A stretch of DNA of 64,000 nucleotides, from contig NIVC01000208.1 of assembly GCA_002269645.1 (NCBI GenBank), positions 441,639 to 505,638 of the forward strand, in the 5' to 3' direction. This document shows, one piece after another, positions 5,850 to 57,134 of the stretch. The notes under the pieces are model-generated. The model saw only the letters and a program-made list of their open reading frames with translations, was not told where the DNA came from and searched no databases. The position numbers were made by a program, and so were the translations under genes. The stretch is from Macrostomum lignano (lineage: Eukaryota). The number at the start of each line of letters is the position of its first letter. Position 1 is the first letter of the stretch.

Positions 5850-7162
5850 ACAACGTGAAAACCAAAGTTTAACCCTCAAATTGTCTCAATGAGGAACTTT
5901 ATTTTCGTCTTTCTTTGTTATGCACGGACTGGCTATTATTTGCACTGTTACTGCAACATGCTGTATTAAATATTAATATGCTATTAGTATATTAATATTA
6001 CTAATTTTAATATTAATTAGCGGCAGATAAAAAAATTGTTAAAATGAAAAGTTAAGAGCGAACAGGCCACTCGACAAAGCTAACGGTAGCTACGGTTGGT
6101 TCAGGATTCAATAGGGCTGGCATATGACGCTGGCTTCGGTTTCTTTGTGAGAGTTTAGGATAGTGGTTCTAGAAGGGAGATCGAGATGATGCTTGGGTCA
6201 AAAGCAGTGGGAAAATGCGCTTTCGGTTCTTGACTCTGACAAGAAGGAAATATTCGGGCGCCTGATTCGTAGCAAAAACGGCATTGAACTGTCCTTGGTT
6301 TGCGTTGCCTAGCAGCCGAGTGACGTCACTTGTCTAGCCGTGCTGTGATTGGTTAGTAAAATGGGGTAGGTACCCCTTGAAAAGGCGGAATAAGCGAATA
6401 GAAAAATGTCTTACTGGTATCGGAGTTCGTCGAGTGCATTTCGTTTCGGTGATTTGAACAACAGCGCTGAGGTTGGGGTGGGTGACAAGAAGTGGGGTGG
6501 GTGTAGGTAATGAGTGATCAGATGATTTATCAGGAGGATGGCAGATATTCAGAGTTGGGATCGGCATTGGTGAACTTGAGGTGAAATAATATAAAAATTT
6601 TGCTGAGATCCTTACCGCTGTCAAATTACGAGATAAAGGCTTGTATTTTTGTTACTCACAAACTGTATTTTTTAATCTCTAACCAGGTGAAGCAGCGTGC
6701 CTGCGGTCTCTTCAAGGCACCGGTGTCAGCCAACTGACAGGCTCTGTCCGCCAAGGAGCTCGCTTATCCCTCGATCAGGTGTGCCGTCTCAGATACCCAT
6801 CCAGTCCTGGCAAATTATTCGTGCATGAGAACTTCATAAAGGACCCAGCTTTGTTGTGCATCAACGTGTACTGCCACAGGGAGGCTTGGGGATCGAGTGC
6901 GCCATTTAGGTACGGCCTTCGAGCCCCGGTCGGCACCCCGTGCGGCAGTCAGAAGAGCTGCAACTGGAACGGCCAGTGCACCTACGACTCGAAGGTCCCC
7001 GCTATCGACATGTCCTGCTTTTTCGGCGACATTAACTCCTTCGACAAGTGCAGCATTGTATACCGGACCATCACCAAGATTCCAAGTGCAGTAATCAGGA
7101 ACAGATATTGCAATCAGATGAAGCCTGCCTGCTGCAAGACGCTGGCCTCCATCTGCTCTTGA
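4268..7162 (+). CDS. Secreted M12B (reprolysin/ADAMTS-like) metalloprotease, copy 1; one -1 frameshift
   Basis: Exons 4268-4280, 4338-5048, 5144-5523, 6687-7162. Signal peptide MQRTVLLLFIVFTVAQA, furin site RKKR, HELAHSLGASHD, Met-turn FLMSP, ADAM Cys-rich domain (LDQVC...GTPCG...C..G.C) and a 6-Cys tail. A missing G at ~5190 breaks the frame before the active site. Confidence 0.88.
5759..5845. repeat. (GA)n microsatellite in intron 3 of metalloprotease 1
   Basis: Direct reading. Confidence 0.95.
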
Positions 7163-8138
7163 CGTTGTCACATAGCTTTAAATGCTGGACCGATTTGTTT
7201 GAGTTAACTATAAACAGCTGATAAAGAGTGAAAATATATTGTCGCAATCCAAAACTCAGTTTCATTCGTTATTGACTCTCGTTTTGCTGTCTATAAATGG
7301 TACCCATTTGGGCAGACGAAGGCCGTTAGAGGCACGGTTCTTTATAAATGAACCGTTCTCACTGTCCTCATTTATAACTCAACACGCCAGGCTTATGGCA
7401 CTAAGCAAGCAAATTCCAGCTCGTAGTTCAGCATCGAAATAAGCGAATTGGGTGGCCCAGTTTCTTTCGGTTAGATTAATAGGAATGGCATGCATCTGCC
7501 CTTTGTCTCTGCATATGAAGCGATTCTCCCTTGAAGTTTTTTTGATAAAACACTAGTGGGCTCTTCAAGCAAAATATTGTCGCCTTGTGGATGCAGGAAG
7601 GAAGAGCTCCAATACTTTTTCGCATTTGAATCTGAATGCGAGGAATATAGTTTTTTGGCTGTTCTGACAGTTTCAAACCGTGTGTGCAACATCTCTTTGT
7701 GACCTAAAGAGAGACTTCTACGGGCTATGTTTTTTCTTTGAGTATCCGCCCAACTTTCTTCTTTTAGATTGGATTTCTCATTGCAGTTGAGCACTAGTTA
7801 CAATATTTGAGAGGGCGGTGTTTTTCATCTTAATACATGTAAATCTCAGCATCACCACACCCTGCACTGGTTGTTGGCAGTATGACCGTACGAGCTATGA
7901 TGTCCTCTGGCGGTCTGGTAAGGGCGTCGAACTGCCCTTTCGAAAAGGCAGCGAGTTTCTGCTCTTGAAAGAACGAAAGATCACTGACGTCGATAGTTGC
8001 TTATAACTTGAGTCAAATTTCAATAGTTTAGTATATATTTTTATTTGGAAGTTCCATCACCAAAAAAGTTTTTTTCGTGCCATTTCTGCTACATTAGTTG
8101 GTGTTTTCGTCTCCATTTGGAACCTGGCTTTTTCCCGA

Positions 8139-10018
8139 TTAGCATAGAGTAGCCAAAGACCTGCAGCAACCCTCCTTGGCGCTGTCAGTACAAGAAGTCC
8201 AGCCCTTCTCGATGTACATCTTCCAGTCTGCGCAGTTGCTCCACGAGTCGCCCCAGAAGCAGCTGTCGTCAGCTGCTGGAGCGGATTCGTCCGCTGAGCA
8301 CTCGCCGTTCCAGTTGCAGCTCTTTTTGTTGCCGCACGGCGTACCAACTGGAGCGCGAAGTCCGCTTACAGATGTACCACCGCCGTCGCTCGAAGCGCAG
8401 TAGATCATGGCGCAGATGGAGGCAGGATTGTTGAAGGTATCAGTAGTGAGGTAAAACTTTCCAGGACCGTTGGGCTGGAAAAAGCGGCAAACCTGGTCGA
8501 GGGTCAAGCGAGTGCCTTCGCGCGTATTCGATGTCAGCTCACTAAGACGGCTTCCCTGGTCGGAAGTCATGCAGTTTGTTGAGCCTGTTTGAGACAAGAG
8601 TCAAGTGTTAATAAAAGTGCAATGTCGCTAAAAATGAATGGTAAAATGAGCACGCACACGGATGCGTACGCAGGGTGCACAACGGTCCTGAATTTGTCAT
8701 CATCACAGGGCATGTACATATCCCTTGACTAAGCCGTTTACCCTCCCTCTGCTTACCCAGAGAGTTAAGATATGCCGCCATGTAGGACACCGAGCAGCTG
8801 GAGAAGCGGTAGGAGTTAGCTACGTTAGCCAGATTGTACATTCCGCCAGACGGAGACATGAGGTTCTTCGCGCCCGAGCTGCAGGTGTTGCCGCTCGCAT
8901 CGTGATGAGAGCCCAAGTTGTGAGCGAGCTCGTGAGCAGCTGTGCCCCAGCTTTGCAGTCCCTGATCCTCGTTGATGCTGACTCGAATATTCCTACAGAC
9001 GCCTCCTACGTACGCCATGCCGCAAACCGATGAGCTACCGCCGCCGGTGATGTCCATACGCGTGAAGGCCATGAAGTGGTCAGCTGTCTTTCCAACGATG
9101 TAGTTCTTCATTGCACTTAAGATGTTGCTTCCCTCAGTATCTAATTTTGAAATCAACTGAATAGCATTGCAATGCGTGCTTAAAATATAAATCACAATAA
9201 AAAGAATCACCCCCTATTTAATTTACCTTCCCCAGCCATCCACTTGTCATCGGCCAGCGTCTTCGAAATGGTCATGCCGATGCAGCTGACGCTGATAGAC
9301 GGGGAGCCGATATTTCTGTACGACGTGTCGATTCCGTTCAAAATATGCGTGTAGTAAAAGTGCAACTCGGTGAGGGCCGCTGAGTCAGTGCTGTAGATGC
9401 TCTTGAAAGCGGACCAGACGCGGCTGTCAATTAGCAGGTAAATCTCCACCTTGTAGTTAGTGGATGCGGTGTTTGTCTGGCGCTTCTTGCGACTCTCGAT
9501 GTCCCTGGCGACGTTGACCTTCTTGGCCAAGTCATGCGGGTTCAACGCGTTCATGGTTACCTGGTGGTCGGCGTCTCCTAGCGGCTCAAGGAAGTACGAC
9601 GTTCCCTCGTGCATCACGTGACCACTAATGCGCCTCTTTCCGTTGACGTGTCGGACGCTGATCACGGACTTGGACTCAATGTCCCTGTAGTGAGCGTGGC
9701 TCGGATGGTGAATCTGGCGAGCCGAAAAAGTCATGGACAGTCCATTTTCTGTCACTGTGACTGGGACATTCTCGAAATCTTGCGTCTTGTTTAGCGGAAT
9801 CCGAACTTTCTTGTTCGAACTGGGCAGCTGTACTTCCATCTCCATAGCTGATGGGTGCAGCTCGTTGCTGCTTGTTCGAGTCACCGTGACGGAAGCCTGA
9901 GCCACCGCGAGGCCCAGCAGGAGGAGCACTGAAAGGAGAGAAATAACAAGATGATGACTTGCATTTTTCCTTGGCTATTTACAAAAAGAAGCAGTATGAG
10001 CTTACCAATCTGACGCAT
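8139..10018 (-). CDS. Secreted M12B (ADAMTS-like) metalloprotease, copy 2; intact
   Basis: Exons 10018-10006, 9928-9227, 9140-8757, 8584-8139, all phase-1 junctions. MRQIVLLLLGLAVAQA, RKKR, HELAHNLGSHHD, NLMSP, Cys-rich domain, tail CFWGD...CCRSLATLC. Confidence 0.93.
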
Positions 10019-11538
10019 TGCAAAGTCTGGAGCTGTTGAAGAGACGACAATCGAAGTCCAGAAACCGATTGGTGGGCAAAGGGCTCGTGTTACCGAAATA
10101 TTTATAGTATTGTCTATTTCCGGTCAAAGTGGAAATGAATTCTTTCGATAAAATAGAACATCTGCTACGGTTGAAGTTGTCCGGATATTAAAGACCCACA
10201 GAAATTAGTCGCAGAAGATTTTCCCGGGACTTGAAATTATTGCATAGTTTCGTCTTCTCTTCCATTTATGTTAATTTCCTTTTCGGTTCCAAAGTTGACA
10301 AGTTCTTCAAGTTAAGGTCAACCCGCTGGTTTTAAAACGAAACTCTGGACGTGACCAACTGTTTGTAGTTTCGTTTAAAAAAAGCTGTAAATACGAGCGT
10401 AGTACGAGTGCTAGGAATTCGTTTGTCAATCTTATGGCAAACTTTTAATAATGAATTTCTGCCTTTAGGGTTCTCAGAGCGGAAATTGAATCGCTTCAAA
10501 CATTTCTTTGCGACACCTATGTGCTGCTTACGCTGATTGTTATACCTGTAGCTTTTTAATACCTGCAACTAGGGGTTCATTGTCGCTAGTCAGTGCTTTT
10601 AGATAGTATTTTGTCTATGGTAAAAACTAACGCAACTTTCACTCCATAGCCTGTGATTCTAGCGTCACTTCTGGATAATGTCCTCGAGTTCTATAAATGT
10701 CTTGATATCGAGCGGCACTGCCGGTCCTTTGGTCAAGCATGACACTTCTGCGTCTTCCTTTTCCTCCGGTAGCATTAGAAATTCGTCACTTGTTCCTCCC
10801 TCTTCGATGTACTTGATAAATGTGGCTAGGTCTTCGGCAGCTGTGTAGTCGTTGCCCGATGTTGATAGCCTTGAAATAAAATCCATGTCGGAGCGTGTGA
10901 CACCAGGAAGACAACTAATCGGCAAGTTGGCCCAGTTAATCAGATGCACTTGGTCTGCAATGATGCTTTTCTTGCTAGTAGTGTTATTTGAGAGCTTTCA
11001 TTTTCTCCCATCACCCCCCTCTATGCCTGCATTCCCCGTTCGCCCGACAACGTGGTCTATGTCTTAAAGCACTTCATTTATTTAAACCGGGCAATAAATT
11101 ATTTATTTCCCGCTGGCCCGGGGCGTATAAACGGCAATTTTACGATAGAAACTTTTAACCATAGACTGTAGACAAAGTCCGAGACAACGACGGGAAATCC
11201 GTCTGCGGGTGATTCTCATGAACCCTGTGTACGAGTGTATGAAGTGTGTCTATAGCCAAAATCAGGGTTCTCTCTCACAGAAAATTATTACCTTAGACTT
11301 TGAGCAAAGAAGATTTGCAAAAAACATAAATTTACCTTTTAAGGTATAACTTCTTTGAGGCTATTTGCTAGTACTGTAAAGGCATTGTTGATACTGAAGT
11401 ATATATAAATAAGTCAAAAAGCCAAAATGACGTACTGTGTCACAACTACACTAGTAATAGCCTCCCTGAGTCCTGGGAATTCTTAGGTCTCTGGTGAACC
11501 TACCGTATTAATGTAATTATTGGCTATAATTTTGACAC

Positions 11539-50045: not shown

Positions 50046-52261
50046 AGAAAGGTGCAGCGTGCTTTTCGCTTTAAGATGCGCCACGTCACTTCAGTTAAAG
50101 TACCGAAGCTCTTTTTTATATCCGCATGGTTCTTTAAGATATTTGAAAGAGGTTTAGACTTCTGCCTGAATTCATATCTCTAGAACAGGCTAAATCAGGT
50201 ATGTAGTTATTGTTTAGTAACTCCATATTATTAAAACTATTCGTAACCGTTAACTTTCAGACACGTGTGACCGATGCATATCCATGACTGCAAACAATGG
50301 AATCAAAATGCGTAAAAATGCTAGAAAGGTACATGAAAAAACTTCCAAACACTGATATTCGACCAACGGTTTTGAGTGGGCATTTTTTGTTTAACTATAT
50401 TGACTCTAATTCATATACATGCGATGGTAGTACCATATATAGTTCTGTAGCCATGCATGTAATTCTCTAAATTTACAAACGGAATTTGATAAAGTAATTG
50501 ACTATATCTAGATCTGTATACTTTAGGTTAACTAGAAACATTTTGCATGAACATGTACATAGTATGTGTTCTGTAAATAATGTTTACTCTAATATTTTAT
50601 GTATTGTGTAGCTTTTGCTTATTGTGCATTCAAAATTAATTATATGTGCAGCACAGCCTAAAAAAGCAAATTCAAATTAACAACTGATTGAGCCTACCTA
50701 ACCGCGCACTTCATTAACTTACTCATGGCTATCGTATTTTGTGTTGCATAATTATTTTATATTTAAAAGACGGTAAAAATACTTCATAAAACCACATAAT
50801 CGTGTATATTATCAGGCAAATAATATTTCGTAATGATGTGATTTAATAGTCAATTTATTGCTCTTCAACTGTAAACTTTGTGTAGTGCCAGCGGTCTCTG
50901 AAGGTTACAGAAAAGAGCAAAAATCTTTTGATAAGATACTAAGCTCAAATTATATGCTTTAAAGCGAGTATCTTGTAACTCTTGCACTGACAACGGCTTA
51001 ATTTTCACATCACGATCAGATCATGCATATTCTGCTGTATCTGTATATAGCAGTACATTTTATGCACATTGCTTGGACCCCAGACAAGAAAATGTGGGCT
51101 TTTATACAGCTTTGATACATCCAGCAAAGATGTAAAACTAGAGACGACGGATTTTTCTACCATTTTTTTCAGTCGTTAGATACTTTATTTAAAAGCTTCA
51201 TATAAACGCACATGGACATGCCATATATCTAATTGTAAGTTCTATGAAATGCTTGTTTTGCCCAGTAGGAAATTCTGGTACGTCCAAGGGTGCGCAGACC
51301 GCGGCGCCCGGTGGCCTGTGGCCGGTAGCGGGGCGCACTCTTTGTCCAGTCGGGGCGCCAGCCTTATGCCCGGCTCTCGGTGTGGACGGCTCAATAAATA
51401 AAGGCAAGAATTGGTCCACTCTACTAACAGTAGTATGCATGGCTTTTTATAGATATATTTTGCTCTGGAATGCAGCCTAGCTTTCTGGTTGTTTCAGAAT
51501 TGAATTTATTTCCCAATAATTTTCAATAATAAATTCAAACAACATTGATGCCACTTGCTTACAAAGTTTGCCTTTTGTGATTTTTCTGCAATTTTTAGAA
51601 AACAAGTTTGAGTCTATGAATGAAATCGAATAAGAAACTTAGATCTAATGAAATTTGAATTTATTTAGCGACGTTAAATGGAACTGATATTAAAACACAA
51701 TATTAGAACGAAAAAATGATCAAGTTTTCTGGCGACAAAGGTGTTGAAAGAATGTCAGTTTTAAAATCTTTTTGTCGCAGCATTTATAATACGTGCTCTC
51801 ATAATTAGAATATTTTAAATTGTCCATCACCCAGCTCTCGCTGATCTTCGGACCTGTTTGATCCACTTGATTCGGTTTCGTCATCAGATTCGGGAGAGCA
51901 GTCAGTGCGGTAGTTGGTTTTCGACTTTGCTGAACTTTCGATGGTTGTTCCGCTTTCGAGGCTGAGAATCCAACTGAATACTCGCTCGCTTTCTGGATTG
52001 GGAGCTTGGCTTTGCTGTCGCCGCTGGCGGCACTTCTCCCGCTGATAGTCGCGATGGTGTCTGTGGCATTGGAGTGTCCAATCGGCGTTTGCTGATTGGT
52101 TGTAAACACCCACCCCAAGTCAACCCCCCTCTGCACTGCACCCCTCCGCCGTGAGGTTTATACCACCTAGCTTTTACTCAGCCTGCCTCACCTTTCTCGC
52201 GCTGCATGAATTTTTTTTTATTGTACGGAGTGGCGTGAGTGCTGCCTAGGCTGCAACTGCA

Positions 52262-53316
52262 ATGGCCGAGATTTCAATTGACCAAATGACTGCAAGGCAG
52301 CTTAGAGACCATCTATGCCAAATGGGACTGCCCAGTGGCGGTCGCAAGCGAGAGTTGCAAGTCAGACTGGAACAAGCCAGTTTCTAAAATCAAGCCAAGC
52401 GACGTGGACGGCCAACAGCCACTCACTCGAGCGAAATCGACCGAGTCAGCACCAGCAGAAGCGACGACGATGAGGAAGCGACCCTGGACGAGGCTGGCGC
52501 CCCGCAGGGCACCGACGATCTGGACCAGAGGATCGCCCGTCAGGAGAAGCTGCTTCGGCTGAAGACTCTTCAACGCCAGACTGCTGAGATCGAGGCTGAG
52601 CTGGAGAACAAGCCTTGCCAACAGAGCCGTAAGTTGCGGAGCCCCTTGCCGATTGACCGGTCCCCTGCTGCCCATGAGCCGGAGCTGGGGCTGCCAGACC
52701 TGGGCCTTCAAGGCACTTCTGCCAGGCCGTCGGGACTGTCAAAGCCCCTTCTGGTAAAGGACTTTATCAACCGTGATGGTGAGGAGCCTGCCTCTGGCGA
52801 GAAGTCCAGAGTCCGGACTGAGCAGATCTCGGCGAGTCAGTGGGTAGCAGGCAGCAACCGAATCCTGCTGAAACTCCTCGACGAGGGTTCCCTCGTCACC
52901 GTTAAGGATGGCGCGGTGGATCTTGAACAGCTGAAGGCCTACGTTCGCTACTGTGTGCAGTTCGGCGAGTTTATGCACCAGGGTTTCAGTCAGGCCGCCC
53001 TCAACTGTTACGATGAAGACTTCAGGACCCTGCAACATCAGTCGAGCGGCAGATGGGAGCGGGAGTCGCTGCAGCTGCTATCCAAGCACATTCTGGCACC
53101 AAAGTCAAATCATGGCGGCAACGCGATCTCCCAGCGCACCAACTTCAAGCCCAGAAGGCCAAAGCAGCAGCTGGCGGCCCGATCGATCCTGAAGGGCGGC
53201 AGCTGTGCGTGAAGTTCAACCGCAACGGCTGTCTACGGCGCGACTGCAAGTTCAGGCACGTCTACTCCGCCTGCTACGAGGCGCACCCGCGCCAGTTCTG
53301 CACTTCAAAAAACTAG
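52262..53316 (+). pseudogene. gag-like ORF1 with N-terminal SAP-like domain and C-terminal Cys/His finger
   Basis: MAEISIDQMTARQLRDHLCQMGLPSGGRKRELQVRLEQ; in-frame TAA at 52385; AKRRGRP; frameshift near 53180; LCVKFNRNGCLRRDCKFRHVYSACYEAHPRQFC. Confidence 0.75.
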
Positions 53317-53329
53317 ATCGCGGCCGGCC

Positions 53330-54990
53330 GGGGGGGGGGCTCAACTGGCAGCCAAAGTCGAACCCCCGCTGCCCCCTGGCTGGCCCTGTCCCAAGCCCCT
53401 CGAGTCCGTCGCTTTCTCATCCGACCTCGCCACAGCCGCCTGGGAAACTGAGCTGACTGACGATCCTGACCGCGAATTCCTGCTGAATGACATCCGCAAC
53501 GGCTTCCAACTCACCTGCCCTGACCCATCAGAAAGAGCCTCAACTATGTCAGAAATCCAGAACTACCTATCAGTCAACAGTTACCGGCAGCTGGTCGAGC
53601 AGCAGGTGCGAGAGGAAATCTTTAATGGCCGCTACGTTCAAGTCAGTGACAAACCGGAGGTCATCAGGGCCCTTGGCGCCATTCCGAAGGGCAACAACAA
53701 GATTCGACTCATCCACGACTGCTCTAACCCTCCGGGTCTCTCCCTAAACAGCCGATTTTCTTCCGACTACAGAATAAAGTTCGAGACCGTTAGTCACTTC
53801 ACCGCCAAGCTGCAACCCGGTTGGTTCATGGCCAAAGTCGACCTCGCCAATGCCTACCGGAGTGTCGGCATGAGCCCGCACGATTTTCGGCTCACCGGCT
53901 TGAAGTGGAAATTCAACGACCAGCGCAGCGATTCGTACATCTGCGACACGCGGCTCCCCTTTGGCGCTGCTGCCTCCGTGGAAGTTTTCCACCGCCTGAG
54001 CCAGGCCGTCAAGCGCATGATGCAGAGGCGGGGCTTCAACGATATCGGCAGTTATCCGACGACTTCGCCATAGCAGCCTCCAGCAAGGACGACTGCCAGC
54101 TCGCTCTCGACACCCTGCTCAATCTGCTGCGGAAGCTTGGCTTCACCATCAACTGGAGCAAGGTGGTGGCGCCGTGCACCAGCCTGGTCTACCTGGGCGT
54201 CCTCATCGACACCGTCATTGGCCTGCTGGAGCTTCCGAAGGACAAGCTTGACGCCACCAAGTCTCAGCTGCAGTCCGCGCTCTCTCGCAAGCGCATCACC
54301 AAGCGCCAACTCCAATCGCTCTGTGGCCGCATCAACTGGGTCTGCCAGGTGGTCCGCATCGGGAGGTGCTTCCTGAGACCACTCCTGCTCGAGCTCAGCG
54401 ACCTGAAGCAGTAGCGGCACAAACTGCGCGTGCACAAGGATCTCCGCGAGATCCTTAGCTGGTGGGACGCCTGACTGGCCGCCTCCCCCAGCTGCAAAAT
54501 CTGGCGTTCCCACGGGCCTAGCTGAGCCATCGAGTCCGACGCGTCCAACTGGGGCGGCTGCGGCATCATCCGCGGCCCAGACACCACCAGCTGGCTCATC
54601 ATGGACTGGCACCGCGACTCAACCGAAATCGAGCCGCTGCACATCAACTTCAAGGAAAGTCTCGCGCCAGTGCTTACGGCCCTGCATTTCCAGCAGCAGC
54701 TGCAAACGGGCAGCCAGCTTGTGATCTACTCTGACAGCACCGCCGCAGTCGGCGCCATCAACAAGGGCTCGTCGCCAAATCGGGTCGTCAACTCGGCTCT
54801 GCAACAGTTGATGCTCCTCGCTGCGCACCACGACCTCTCCGTCTAGGCCTTCCACGTCCCCGGGACATTCCAGATCTTCGCTGATAGTGGCAGCCGAGCC
54901 GATGACATCAGCGAGCTGACAAACTTCCTGCCCCGGCTCTTTGGCTCTGTTCACGCTGACCTTAGCAACCTTAGCGAGCACACTCTCTCG
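53330..54990 (+). pseudogene. Reverse transcriptase + RNase H (DIRS-type), disrupted
   Basis: WETELTDDPDREFLL..IRNGF, ALGAIPK..KIRLIHDCS, AKVDLANAYR, RLPFG, Y(fs)DD at ~54055, ESDASNWGG, HINFKE, YSDSTAAVGAINKG. Stops include 54412 and 54844. Confidence 0.88.
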
Positions 54991-55049
54991 CCAGCCACCT
55001 GCGAATTTCTCGCCCTACAGATCGCCTGCCTCAAGTCCCGAGCGCGAAC

Positions 55050-56001
55050 TTCAGCAAGCGCTACCGCGAGCTCTGCCACCTGGCCTTCTCTGAGACAACC
55101 GCGCGCTCTTACCGCTGCCAGATCGACTCCTGGAAGTGGTTCAGCAAGCAGATGCGCATCGACAGCACGAGACCGTCCCTGCAGCATCGCGCTGTCCGAC
55201 CGCCTCTCCTCGCATGCCAGCGTCGGTGCGTACATTAACGCCGCAGACCTGCACTGCAAGCTCAAGACCGGCCGCGGCCTTCCTCGCGACCCCCGCATCG
55301 ACCTGCTCCTCCGCGGTGTGCAGCGCAAACTCGCCAAGCCGCCGGTGCGCAAGGCGCCCATCACTCCGGGTGACCTCCTCAAACTGCGAGGAACCCTGCG
55401 CCTGCAGCAGCCTCAAGATGCAGCCTTCGGGGCGGCGGCCCTGGTCGGATTCTGGGGCCTCCTGCGCCGCGCCAATCTGTGCTGCTCGAAACCCTTCCCA
55501 CCAGCCGGCGAGGCGGTCACCTGCGGCGACCTGCAAGTATCACCGGATCTGGCCATCCTGCACATTCGGCGCTCCAAGACGAATCAGTTCCGCCAGCGAG
55601 TGCACCGCGTTGTCCTGCCGCGCCTCCGGCACGCGGCGCAGTACCCGCTCTGCCCGGTGGCAGCGCTGCTTCACCACCTGCGCATCAAACAGCCCGACCG
55701 CGCTGCTGCTGCCCACCTCTTTGCCTACCGAAGCAGCGGCGGCCTGACGCCTCTGACCGGCACCCGGTTCTGTCGCCTGTTTCAGCACGTCGTCCACCGC
55801 GCCGGCCTGGCAGACCGGTCTCTGTCCCCTCACAGCCTTCGACGCGGCGGCGCCTCGCTGGCGTTCCGCGCCGGTGTGCCGCTGCCGGTCGTCAAGGCCC
55901 TGGGCGACTGGCGGAGCTCGGCGATTGAGGTGTACCTGGAGCTGGAAAAGGGCTTCGACCTCCAGCTGGCGGCTGTTCGCAAACTGTCTCAATGCCTTTA
56001 A
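55050..56001 (+). pseudogene. Tyrosine recombinase; catalytic domain intact, N-terminus frameshifted
   Basis: GLLRRANL (R), RSKTNQ (K), HSLRRGGA (HxxR), LGDWRS (W), IEVYL (Y). The N-terminal SETTARSYR..WKWF block is in another frame. Confidence 0.88.
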
Positions 56002-56494
56002 TTTTTCGTTTTCCTGCCCTGGGTAGAGGCTGGTGTGCTGTCTGCTTTCTTTTTCCACTGGCTTGGACTCAAATGCTCAGATTTTTTTTCTTCTCAACTC
56101 GTGTTTCTTTTTTTTCTTATTTCGTATTTTATCTTTTTCTTGCAATGATGACTGTTGTTTTATCGATTAAGTGCTTTTTTAATGACCGTTTATTTTATTT
56201 TTGCTTGCAAGCGTGTCCCAGCATTCTGCGTGCCCCCCGTTTTTCTTTCACTATTTTCCCATCATTTTTCGGATTTTGGACCGTCGTATCCACTCGCACT
56301 GTACTCGATACTCGCAACCACTCACGTCCGCCTTCCCTTTCCTTGGGGTGTGATGTTTAAAGAAAAAAATTACTGTATGCACATTTTATCTTACTGACAG
56401 TAGTATTTAATGCTTAGCAATCATCGTATTCATCGTTCATCATTCAGTTTAAATAAGTTTTTTACTCACTAGGGAAAAAGAAGATAAATGGCTG

Positions 56495-57134
56495 TGTCTT
56501 TGCACGGCGCTGCCAGAAGCGGGACTTTGAGTCGCTGTTACCAGAGACTGTCTTTGCACGGCGCTGCCAGAAGCGGGACTTTGAGTCGCTGTTACCAGAG
56601 ACTGTCTTTGCACGGCGCTGCCAGAAGCGGGACTTTGAGTCGCTGTTACCAGAGACTGTCTTTGCACGGCGCTGCCGAAGCGGGACTTTGAGTCGCTGTT
56701 ACCAGAGACTGTCTTTGCACGGCGCTGCCAGAAGCGGGACTTTGAGTCGCTGTTACCAGAGACTGTCTTTGCACGGCGCTGCCAGAAGCGGGACTTGAGT
56801 CGCTGTTACCAGAGACTGTCTTTGCACGGCGCTGCCAGAAGCGGGACTTTGAGTCGCTGTTACCAGAGACTGTCTTTGCACGGCGCTGCCGAAGCGGGAC
56901 TTTGAGTCGCTGTTACCAGAGACTGTCTTTGCACGGCGCTGCCAGAAGCGGGACTTTGAGTCGCTGTTACCAGAGACTGTCTTTGCACGGCGCTGCCGAA
57001 GCGGGACTTTGAGTCGCTGTTACCAGAGACTGTCTTTGCACGGCGCTGCCAGAAGCGGGACTTTGAGTCGCTGTTACCAGAGACTGTCTTTGCACGGCGC
57101 TGAAGAGCGGCGCTGCTTTGAGTCGCTGTTACCA
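56495..57134. repeat. 54-bp minisatellite (~12 copies)
   Basis: Unit gtctttgcacggcgctgccagaagcgggactttgagtcgctgttaccagagact; no spacers. Confidence 0.95.

What the first reader, a model, noticed from the sequence alone, without database searches (positions are those of the whole stretch)
52103..56361. YR retrotransposon ends reconstruct a palindromic att-like circle junction with a TAAA crossover core
Seen: left junction ttg-TAAA-cacccaccccaag, right junction cttggggtgtgatgtt-TAAA-gaaaa. Joining the ends gives cttggggtg-tga-tgtttaaaca-cc-caccccaag, an imperfect palindrome centred on TTTAAA; the empty site is ttgTAAAg. No long ITR/ICR (DIRS1) or split direct repeats (Ngaro/PAT) were visible by eye. 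Known: DIRS-order elements are thought to integrate through circular intermediates using their YR and leave no true TSD. Inference: the inverted arms are recombinase binding sites flanking a 4-6-bp overlap. This would be a compact terminal structure that may define a distinct subgroup with a tractable recombination site.
Basis: partly seen in the sequence, partly recalled or inferred. Interest (0 to 1): 0.7.

Follow-up and report, generated by a model that had tools for sequence, protein, structure and literature searches.

The report
Dead Ngaro-like retrotransposon, palindromic end junction
This is one decayed copy of a Ngaro-type tyrosine-recombinase retrotransposon whose two ends, when joined, form a loxP-like palindrome around TTTAAA; related elements share the TTTAA crossover motif but carry the usual split repeats, so the ends look genuine while the claim of a new repeat-less subgroup is unproven.

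Summary
TAAA lies at 52103-52106 and 56358-56361. The arms CACCCACCCCAAG and CTTGGGGTGTGATG sit just inside. No split direct repeats or long ITR/ICR occur in the element or elsewhere in the window.

The element has the order gag(SAP, CCCH)-RT-RNase H-YR with no methyltransferase. It is dead, with eight frameshifts or premature stops. No second copy is reachable: the nearest relatives are 44-49% identical in RT and at most 40% in YR.

In the nearest RT clade, all eight families whose repeats could be resolved are classical A1-[ORFs]-B1A2B2 Ngaro elements. In every one, B ends in TTTAA. In 11 of 11 independent insertions the perfect TTTAA is on the right. The five bases left of A1 are a TTTAA-like variant (34 of 55 positions match, about 17 expected). 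The window shows the same polarity: TGTAAA on the left, TTTAAA on the right.

So the crossover-core idea is supported, and it applies to the whole clade. The relatives place TTTAA at the foot of a hairpin inside A. The window places TTTAAA at the centre of a 33-bp palindrome, which is a real variant.

"No split repeats" rests on one decayed copy. Single-B derivatives occur in split-repeat families (L001, L048, L055). A distinct subgroup is therefore not shown.

The parts
52101..52106 (+). By analogy with relatives this is the target-derived, imperfect copy of the TTTAA(A) crossover core.
   Evidence: for the sequence. Searches show that in 11 of 11 related insertions the variant copy is on the left.
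52107..52119 (+). Left terminal arm CACCCACCCCAAG, the inverted partner of the right arm.
52107..52262 (+). 5' non-coding region, equivalent to repeat A of Ngaro elements. No second copy (A2) exists anywhere in the window.
52263..53316 (+). gag-like gene. SAP domain at 52278-52379. Premature stop at 52385-52387. Frameshift somewhere between about 53150 and 53205. C-terminal CCCH zinc finger at 53206-53259. Stop codon at 53314-53316.
   Evidence: Pfam SAP E = 2.9e-7. The gag core and CCCH finger are conserved in the close clade.
53441..55008 (+). pol (RT, thumb, RNase H). Frame 0 runs to 54055, with a frameshift at 54055/54058 inside the YxDD box, then frame 2. In-frame stops at 54412, 54472, 54523 and 54844. 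There is no room for a methyltransferase domain before YR.
   Evidence: Pfam RVT_1, RVT_thumb and weak RNase_H. tblastn with the pol of L088 and L094. RT is 41-46% identical to the fetched close-clade loci and up to 49% in the protein database.
55050..56001 (+). Tyrosine recombinase. The N-terminal part is in frame 1, with a frameshift at about 55170-55215, then frame 2 to the stop codon 55999-56001. The catalytic R...K...HxxR...W...Y residues are still present.
   Evidence: Pfam Phage_integrase E = 3.3e-5. Alignment A1. tblastn.
56002..56355 (+). 3' non-coding region, T-rich, equivalent to a single repeat B. No B2 is present.
   Evidence: Its length is within the range from YR stop to B1 end in relatives, 187-538 nt.
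56342..56355 (+). Right terminal arm CTTGGGGTGTGATG.
56356..56361 (+). It matches the clade-wide B end ...TTTAA.
   Evidence: B-end motifs come from SDR-defined L004 and L085-L094, and by analogy from L016, L021 and L051.

Best explanation
The feature is one old, inactivated copy of a Ngaro-like (DIRS-order) tyrosine-recombinase retrotransposon. It comes from a lineage only distantly related (about 45% RT identity) to a large radiation of marine-animal and holobiont Ngaro elements.

Its two ends are genuine. Joined, as they would be in a circular DNA intermediate, they form a 33-bp imperfect palindrome: arms of 14 and 13 nt around TTTAAA.

I infer that the element's tyrosine recombinase crossed over at this TTTAA(A) core with a TTTAA-like genomic sequence (TGTAAA). 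That left the target's imperfect copy on the left and the element's own perfect copy on the right, with no true target-site duplication. The same core and the same left/right polarity are seen in the related split-repeat families, so this is a clade-wide integration signature and not peculiar to this copy.

The copy has the form A-[gag-pol-YR]-B. It most likely lost A2-B2 secondarily, either by recombination between B1 and B2 or between the internal and terminal junction sites.

Shown here:
- the sequences and the gene content;
- the decay of the copy;
- the absence of repeats;
- the shared TTTAA end and polarity in relatives.

Inferred:
- the circular intermediate;
- recombinase binding to the arms;
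- the exact crossover point;
- the secondary loss of A2-B2.
For: - Domains and order are gag(SAP, CCCH)-RT-RH-YR, with YR catalytic residues retained.
- The terminal inverted match is beyond chance and coincides with the GC step.
- Eight nearest-clade families are resolved as A1-B1A2B2 (L004, L031, L085, L086, L087, L088-90, L091, L092-93, L094). More distant families are resolved likewise (L002, L017, L042, L081, L034/47/71).
- B ends in TTTAA in L004 and L085-L094. The same TTTAA|GTGC/ATGC junction motif appears in L016, L021 and L051.
- In 11 of 11 insertions the perfect TTTAA is on the right and the variant on the left. 34 of 55 left positions match TTTAA. Three copies of one family have TTTAT, TTGAA and TTAAA.
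- The window shows TGTAAA against TTTAAA with the same polarity.
- Single-B copies exist in SDR families: L001, L048 versus L042, and L055 versus L047.
- The unit length of 4.25 kb matches the unit circles of relatives, 3.9-5.1 kb.
Against: - Only one copy exists in reach, so neither the boundaries nor the original presence of A2-B2 can be checked directly.
- The relatives are distant.
- In the relatives TTTAA sits at the foot of a hairpin wholly inside A, followed by a second TTTAAA. It is not at the centre of inverted arms, so the window's junction is not simply homologous.
- L031, a close-clade family, has a different junction (..CACCC|ACAACC).
- The L048 and L055 single-B forms could be short-read assembly collapses.
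- Some related insertions match the core poorly on the left (2 of 5 in L004, L091 and L094).
Confidence: 0.55

Rival explanations
1. This lineage never had split direct repeats. It circularises and integrates as a unit circle through a compact loxP-like site: inverted YR-binding arms around a TTTAAA overlap. It would therefore be a distinct Ngaro-related subgroup.
For: - No SDR in the copy although its ORFs are still recognisable, so SDRs of 100 bp or more would still be detectable.
- The junction geometry of 14 + 6 + 13 bp is that of simple YR sites.
- None of the examined relatives has the core at the centre of inverted arms, so the architecture really differs.
- The 5' UTR is short, 156 nt against 220-560 nt for A in relatives.
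- A Ngaro-like family without SDRs has been reported: DIRS-54_XT (PMC9210276).
Against: - The sample is a single dead copy.
- All eight resolved families of the nearest clade have SDRs.
- Single-B derivatives arise within SDR families.
- Without an internal B1A2 junction the published replication model has no template to restore the termini.
Confidence: 0.25
2. The terminal palindrome and the TAAA repeat are coincidences. The copy is truncated or its true ends lie elsewhere.
For: - The significance is moderate: 1 of 200 and 5 of 200 shuffles.
- The boundaries were chosen by eye.
- The right-hand TAAA is partly made by the A-rich flank.
- There is no second copy to confirm the ends.
Against: - Both arms sit exactly at the composition step.
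- The right end matches the clade-wide B end TTTAA. The left/right polarity of the core matches 11 of 11 related insertions.
- The unit length and the UTR lengths fit relatives.
Confidence: 0.1
3. The genomic element has normal split repeats, and the assembly of this window collapsed B1-A2-B2 into a single B.
For: Same-locus pairs with and without A2 in short-read metagenome contigs (L042/L048, L047/L055) show that such collapse or deletion is common. Many short-read contigs of relatives close on themselves through the repeats.
Against: The window carries dozens of long minisatellite arrays assembled through, which suggests long reads. L001, from a long-read-style contig, shows that genuine single-B copies exist.
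Confidence: 0.07

Closest known systems
Ngaro-like retrotransposons (DIRS order; Goodwin & Poulter 2004, as summarised in PMC9210276, PMC4157794, PMC8547959)
   Same: - gag, RT/RNase H and YR in that order on one strand.
- No methyltransferase domain.
- RT is 44-49% and YR at most 40% identical to proteins of elements that carry A1-[ORFs]-B1A2B2 repeats.
- The gag CCCH finger is shared.
- There is no true TSD.
   Different: - This copy has no A2 or B2.
- Its junction palindrome is split between the two ends, with the core in the centre.
- Its gag carries an N-terminal SAP domain not seen in the relatives examined.
DIRS1-like elements: 3-bp circular junction / target model (Poulter & Goodwin 2005 via PMC7192593; Piednoel et al. 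2011, PMC3266345)
   Same: - A short sequence at the joined termini recombines with an identical or similar genomic sequence.
- The element ends up flanked by that sequence on both sides, without a TSD.
- TTT/AAA-type trinucleotides are common.
   Different: - DIRS1-like elements have long ITRs, an ICR and a methyltransferase domain. None of these is present here.
- The core here is 5-6 nt (TTTAA/TTTAAA), not 3.
Ngaro-like copies reported without terminal repeats (DIRS-54_XT of Xenopus, PMC9210276; truncated Ngaro of Neosartorya fischeri, PMC3783388)
   Same: Ngaro-type coding content with no detectable SDRs.
   Different: Those reports describe no terminal palindrome or core. Whether they are derivatives or true SDR-less families is also open.
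Simple tyrosine-recombinase sites (loxP, FRT, dif; my own knowledge)
   Same: Two inverted arms of about 13 bp around a 6-8 bp spacer. Here 14 + 6 + 13 = 33 bp.
   Different: - The arms are imperfect (one mismatch and one 1-nt indel).
- The site exists only after circularisation.
- No binding or cleavage data exist.
- The target only approximates the core and has no arms.
Cryptons (YR DNA transposons; PMC3212892, PMC13465315)
   Same: Eukaryotic YR elements flanked by short direct repeats that reflect microhomology with the target and not duplication.
   Different: Cryptons have no RT, RNase H or gag.
Folded single-strand YR sites (integron attC, CTX phage attP; my own knowledge)
   Same: Applies to the relatives only.
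- A conserved two-tier hairpin carries the core in its outer stem.
- There is a single, polar exchange point, with the perfect core always on one side.
- DIRS-1 is reported to use single-stranded cDNA (PMC7192593).
   Different: This is purely an analogy. In the window the core would lie in the hairpin tip, not in a stem.

Membership tests
Ngaro-like retrotransposons | RT/RNase H and a tyrosine recombinase encoded in one element on one strand, in the order gag - RT/RH - YR | tested here: met
   Pfam SAP, RVT_1, RVT_thumb, RNase_H (weak) and Phage_integrase, in that order. tblastn with relatives' pol and YR.
Ngaro-like retrotransposons | No methyltransferase domain between RNase H and YR | tested here: met
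   The pol match ends at 55008 and YR begins at about 55050. No Pfam hit falls in between. There is no room for a domain of about 250 aa.
Ngaro-like retrotransposons | Split direct repeats A1-[ORFs]-B1-A2-B2 | tested here: not met
   No repeat of any part of 52000-56500 occurs in the window. The feature is met in the relatives L002, L004, L017, L031, L042, L081 and L085-L094. The window copy is therefore Ngaro-related by genes and sequence, but as found it lacks the structural hallmark.
Ngaro-like retrotransposons | Sequence relationship of RT and YR to elements with the Ngaro structure | tested here: met
   RT is 41-46% identical to fetched close-clade loci, including SDR-bearing L004 and L031, and 44-49% to the best database hits. 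Five of those hits (P0110, P0113, P0114, P0117, P0119) were fetched and their loci L085-L090 and L094 are SDR-bearing. YR is at most 40% identical. No formal tree with reference Ngaro, DIRS1 and PAT sequences was made.
DIRS1-like retrotransposons | Long inverted terminal repeats plus an internal complementary region, and a methyltransferase domain | tested here: not met
   Only a 13-17 nt terminal inverted match is present. The best internal complement of an end (54633-54653, inside the RNase H coding region) is at chance level, E about 0.3 by my estimate. There is no methyltransferase domain.
PAT-like retrotransposons | Methyltransferase domain plus split direct repeats | tested here: not met
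   Neither is present.
Simple YR recombination site (loxP/FRT/dif type) | Two inverted arms of about 11-14 bp flanking a 6-8 bp overlap region | tested here: met
   The joined ends read CTTGGGGTGTGATG-TTTAAA-CACCCACCCCAAG. This holds at sequence level only.
Simple YR recombination site (loxP/FRT/dif type) | Recombinase binds the arms and cleaves at the edges of the overlap | not testable with these tools
   This needs biochemistry. The YR of this copy is frameshifted.
TTTAA-core Ngaro clade (defined here from relatives) | [quoted passage not shown] | tested here: met
   The window has ...GATGTTTAA(A) on the right and TGTAAA on the left.
TTTAA-core Ngaro clade (defined here from relatives) | The start of A carries N3-5, then a 6-10 bp hairpin, then N2-3, then a second TTTAAA | tested here: not met
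   The window's first 50 nt are C-rich and cannot self-pair. The nearest motif is TTTATA, 49 nt in. Relatives fold at z -2.0 to -6.9.

The most novel reading that the evidence does not exclude
The window preserves a relic of a Ngaro-derived lineage that gave up split repeats. It would use a minimal, self-contained loxP-like site, with 13-14 bp inverted arms around TTTAAA, that forms only when the ends meet. More broadly, the polar TTTAA signature across the clade (perfect copy always on the B side, plus a conserved junction hairpin) may mean that these retrotransposons integrate by a single strand exchange on a folded or partly single-stranded site, as integron attC and CTX phage do. That would give a concrete, testable mechanism for DIRS-order integration.
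Probability: 0.2. Interest if true: 0.65.

Novelty: new variant of a known kind. Interest (0 to 1): 0.4.

Why it matters
How DIRS-order retrotransposons integrate has never been shown biochemically. The published model (a circle, a short junction sequence and the element's YR) rests on sequence comparison of DIRS1-like elements.

This finding, with the relatives gathered for it, points to a defined 5-6 bp core, TTTAA(A), and a fixed polarity in one Ngaro clade. In the window's lineage it also points to an unusually simple palindromic site.

If intact relatives of either kind are used, the recombinase/site pair could be tested directly. It might also be of interest as a eukaryotic site-specific recombination tool.

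The window copy itself is an ordinary dead transposon with no likely effect on its host.

Tried and rejected
1. Other copies. There are none in the window. The exact-protein look-up of the 227-aa YR ORF found nothing. Protein searches with YR and RT found nothing closer than 40% and 49% identity. No fetched locus matches beyond one 47-52-nt stretch of RT coding sequence.

2. Host identification. The ADAM-like exon gave no homologue. Rfam gave no hit. Pfam found nothing on the left-flank ORFs.

3. An alternative 'GT parse' of the ends (element = GTAAACACC...GATGTTTAA, by analogy with TTTAA|GTGC junctions). I dropped it once three independent insertions of one family showed that the bases left of A are a target-derived core variant. 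Both parses give nearly the same palindromic junction.

4. A DIRS1-type ICR. The best internal complement of the right end (54633-54653) lies in the RNase H coding region and is at chance level.

5. A hairpin in the left flank (52078-52099) as a target signal. It is not seen in the left flanks of 11 related insertions, and 12% of background windows fold as well.

6. Inverted arms flanking the core in relatives. None are convincing on reading the junctions.

7. Formal covariation on a MAFFT alignment of junction hairpins. The stems are mis-registered by slippage in the T/A runs, so I rely on the individual folds and on the differing stem sequences.

8. A scan of the window for the relatives' TTTAA-hairpin-TTTAAA module. 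It found only an unrelated hairpin at 10331-10379.

9. Goodwin & Poulter 2004 and Poulter & Butler 2015 are not held. I cannot say whether the TTTAA core or the junction hairpin was already described there.
Full report
**The observation.** TAAA occupies 52103-52106 and 56358-56361. CACCCACCCCAAG follows the left TAAA, and CTTGGGGTGTGATGTT precedes the right one. Between them lies a GC-rich block (58-67% GC) in a window that is about 40-48% GC on either side. Joining the ends with TAAA counted once gives CTTGGGGTG-TGA-TGTTTAAACA-CC-CACCCCAAG.
- This is the best inverted alignment between the two end regions, and 1 of 200 shuffles reaches it.
- The top-ranked of 24,111 possible joins all use this pair of arms.
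- The joined 41-mer folds at -9.5 kcal/mol as DNA, z = -2.56.
- No part of 52000-56500 is repeated anywhere in the 64-kb window. There are therefore no split direct repeats, no long ITR and no ICR.

The flanking repeat is better read as TGTAAA against TTTAAA, 5 of 6.

**What the element is.** Reading left to right:
- A gag-like gene from 52263. It has an N-terminal SAP domain (Pfam E = 2.9e-7) and a C-terminal CCCH finger at 53206-53259.
- RT with thumb, then RNase H.
- A tyrosine recombinase ending at the stop codon 55999-56001.

Nothing fits between RNase H and YR, so there is no methyltransferase domain. The YR keeps the catalytic R, K, HxxR, W and Y residues.

The copy is dead:
- gag has a premature stop at 52385 and a frameshift before the finger.
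- pol has a frameshift at 54055/54058 in the YxDD box and in-frame stops at 54412, 54472, 54523 and 54844.
- YR has a frameshift near 55170-55215.

The gene content and order are those of Ngaro-like elements, not of DIRS1-like or PAT-like elements.

**Other copies.**
- The window holds no second copy.
- The exact-protein look-up found nothing.
- The closest YR and RT proteins in 5.8 billion clusters are only 40% and 49% identical.
- The host could not be named.

I therefore turned to relatives whose termini can be read directly.

**Relatives have classical split repeats.** I fetched 95 loci in all. In the RT clade nearest to the window (41-49% identity), every family with both ends, or the full 3' end, in reach is A1-[ORFs]-B1-A2-B2. 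These are L004, L031, L085, L086, L087, L088/L089/L090, L091, L092/L093 and L094. Most come from long-read-style contigs of hundreds of kilobases. More distant families are the same: L002/L003, L017, L042, L081 and L034/L047/L071. Many short-read contigs close on themselves, as expected from collapsed split repeats. Their unit lengths are 3.9-5.1 kb. The window element is 4.25 kb.

**Copies without A2-B2 occur inside such families.**
- L001, from a long-read-style contig, ends exactly at the end of a single B.
- L048 and L055 share their flanks with L042 and L047 at 98-99.8% identity. They lack precisely the A2-to-B2 segment. This is either an allelic deletion or an assembly collapse.

One decayed A-ORFs-B copy is therefore not evidence for a lineage without split repeats. 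Its ORFs are still recognisable, so repeats of 100 bp or more would still be seen. Their absence is real for this copy. It is most simply explained by recombination between B1 and B2.

**The junction in relatives.** B1|A2 is the natural image of the circle junction. B ends in TTTAA in L004, L085, L087, L088-90, L091, L092-93 and L094. In L086 it ends in TTTAATA. L016, L021 and L051 show the same TTTAA|GTGC or TTTAA|ATGC motif in their YR-to-gag spacer. The window's right end is ...GATGTTTAA(A).

After TTTAA, A begins with 3-5 nt, a 6-10 bp hairpin whose sequence differs between families, 2-3 nt and a second TTTAAA. Examples of the stems are CAAGGCTAC/GTAGCCTTG, CAGATAAT/ATTATCTG, TCTCCA/TGGAGA and AACTTCA/TGAAGTT. 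The whole module folds as a two-tier hairpin with z from -2.0 to -6.9. L031 lacks the motif, and so do the more distant families.

**A polar core.** In all 11 independent insertions of this clade the perfect TTTAA is at the right end. The five bases immediately left of A1 are a variant.
- The three copies of one family have TTTAT, TTGAA and TTAAA.
- The two copies of another family have TTTAT and GATAA.
- In L085 the left flank matches the B end at 9 of 12 positions.

Overall 34 of 55 left positions match TTTAA, against about 17 expected. Fisher's combination of the per-locus tests gives about 0.002. The perfect copy is never on the left (11 of 11). The window fits this pattern: TGTAAA on the left, TTTAAA on the right. 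The published model for DIRS1-like elements is the same in principle, with a 3-bp junction (PMC3266345, PMC7192593).

**How the window differs.** In the relatives the core sits at the foot of a hairpin that lies wholly within A. I saw no inverted arms on either side of it. In the window the first 50 nt are C-rich and cannot self-pair. The pairing partner of the left end is the right end, and TTTAAA lies at the centre of a 14 + 6 + 13 bp palindrome. That is the geometry of loxP, FRT or dif. It is a genuine variant of the junction, whatever the history of A2-B2. Whether the arms bind the recombinase is inference.

**Mechanism proposed.** An RNA is reverse-transcribed to cDNA, and the termini are brought together. 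The element's tyrosine recombinase then exchanges strands at the 3' edge of TTTAA(A) with a TTTAA-like genomic site. This leaves target-core - A...B - element-core. The copy later lost A2-B2 and decayed.
- The ends and core are right: about 0.8.
- Secondary loss of A2-B2 as against a primary repeat-less structure: about 2:1.
- The strict polarity, the conserved hairpin and the report of single-stranded DIRS-1 cDNA (PMC7192593) invite comparison with attC and CTX-type single-strand recombination. This is speculation.

**Verdict.** The element is a new, distant Ngaro-related lineage with a variant junction and a SAP-bearing gag. The window copy itself is an ordinary dead transposon. Interest is moderate. 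It lies mainly in the clade-wide TTTAA signature, which makes the integration step testable.

Noticed in passing
window 52278-52379: The gag of this element begins with a SAP (DNA/scaffold-binding) domain (Pfam E = 2.9e-7, above the gathering score). Residues 1-150 of this gag have no match in the gag of related loci. In Cafeteria Ngaros, ORF1 was proposed to set integration-site choice (PMC8547959).
   Followed up: partly
window 52078-52099: A hairpin, CCAATCGGC-GTTT-GCTGATTGG, abuts the insertion site one base before TGTAAA. Left flanks of 11 related insertions show no such hairpin, and 12% of background windows fold as well, so it is probably a coincidence.
   Followed up: yes
window 56495-57134: A 54-bp minisatellite of about 12 copies at 97% identity starts 133 bp to the right of the element. 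The whole window is packed with minisatellites and microsatellites: Tandem Repeats Finder gave 39 rows, some of them overlapping descriptions of one array, with units of 2-147 bp.
   Followed up: no
window 6779-9929 (- strand): Exons of a secreted reprolysin/ADAM-like zinc metalloprotease, with a signal peptide, an HELAHNLGSHHD active site and Cys-rich C-terminal repeats. The word-indexed search of 5.8 billion proteins found no homologue, so the host lineage is poorly sampled.
   Followed up: partly
window 10331-10379: A strong 49-nt hairpin, TTTAAAACGAAACT...AGTTTCGTTTAAA, superficially like the TTTAA-hairpin-TTTAAA module of Ngaro relatives. It has no Ngaro sequence around it.
   Followed up: no
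L042 6960-7088 vs L048; L047 3320-3474 vs L055: Pairs of contigs share their flanks at 98-99.8% identity but differ by presence or absence of exactly the A2-to-B2 segment of a Ngaro element. This is either an allelic B1xB2 deletion or an assembly collapse.
   Followed up: partly
L085 3960-3990: The left flank of this insertion matches the element's own B end at 9 of 12 positions (TTCGGGTATTTTTT against TTTGGGTAATTTAA). It looks as if the element integrated next to a junction-like sequence, possibly the remnant of an older copy.
   Followed up: no
P0188: A protein named 'amiloride-sensitive sodium channel [Branchiostoma belcheri]' by NCBI matches this element's RT at 43% identity over 95% of the query. 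It is therefore probably a mis-annotated Ngaro-like pol, or a gene model that includes one.
   Followed up: no
L002, L004, L017 (B repeats): The B repeats of several relatives carry AATAAA 35-50 nt before the B end, followed by a GT-rich stretch. Transcripts probably end close to the B end. The window's 3' region has no AATAAA.
   Followed up: no
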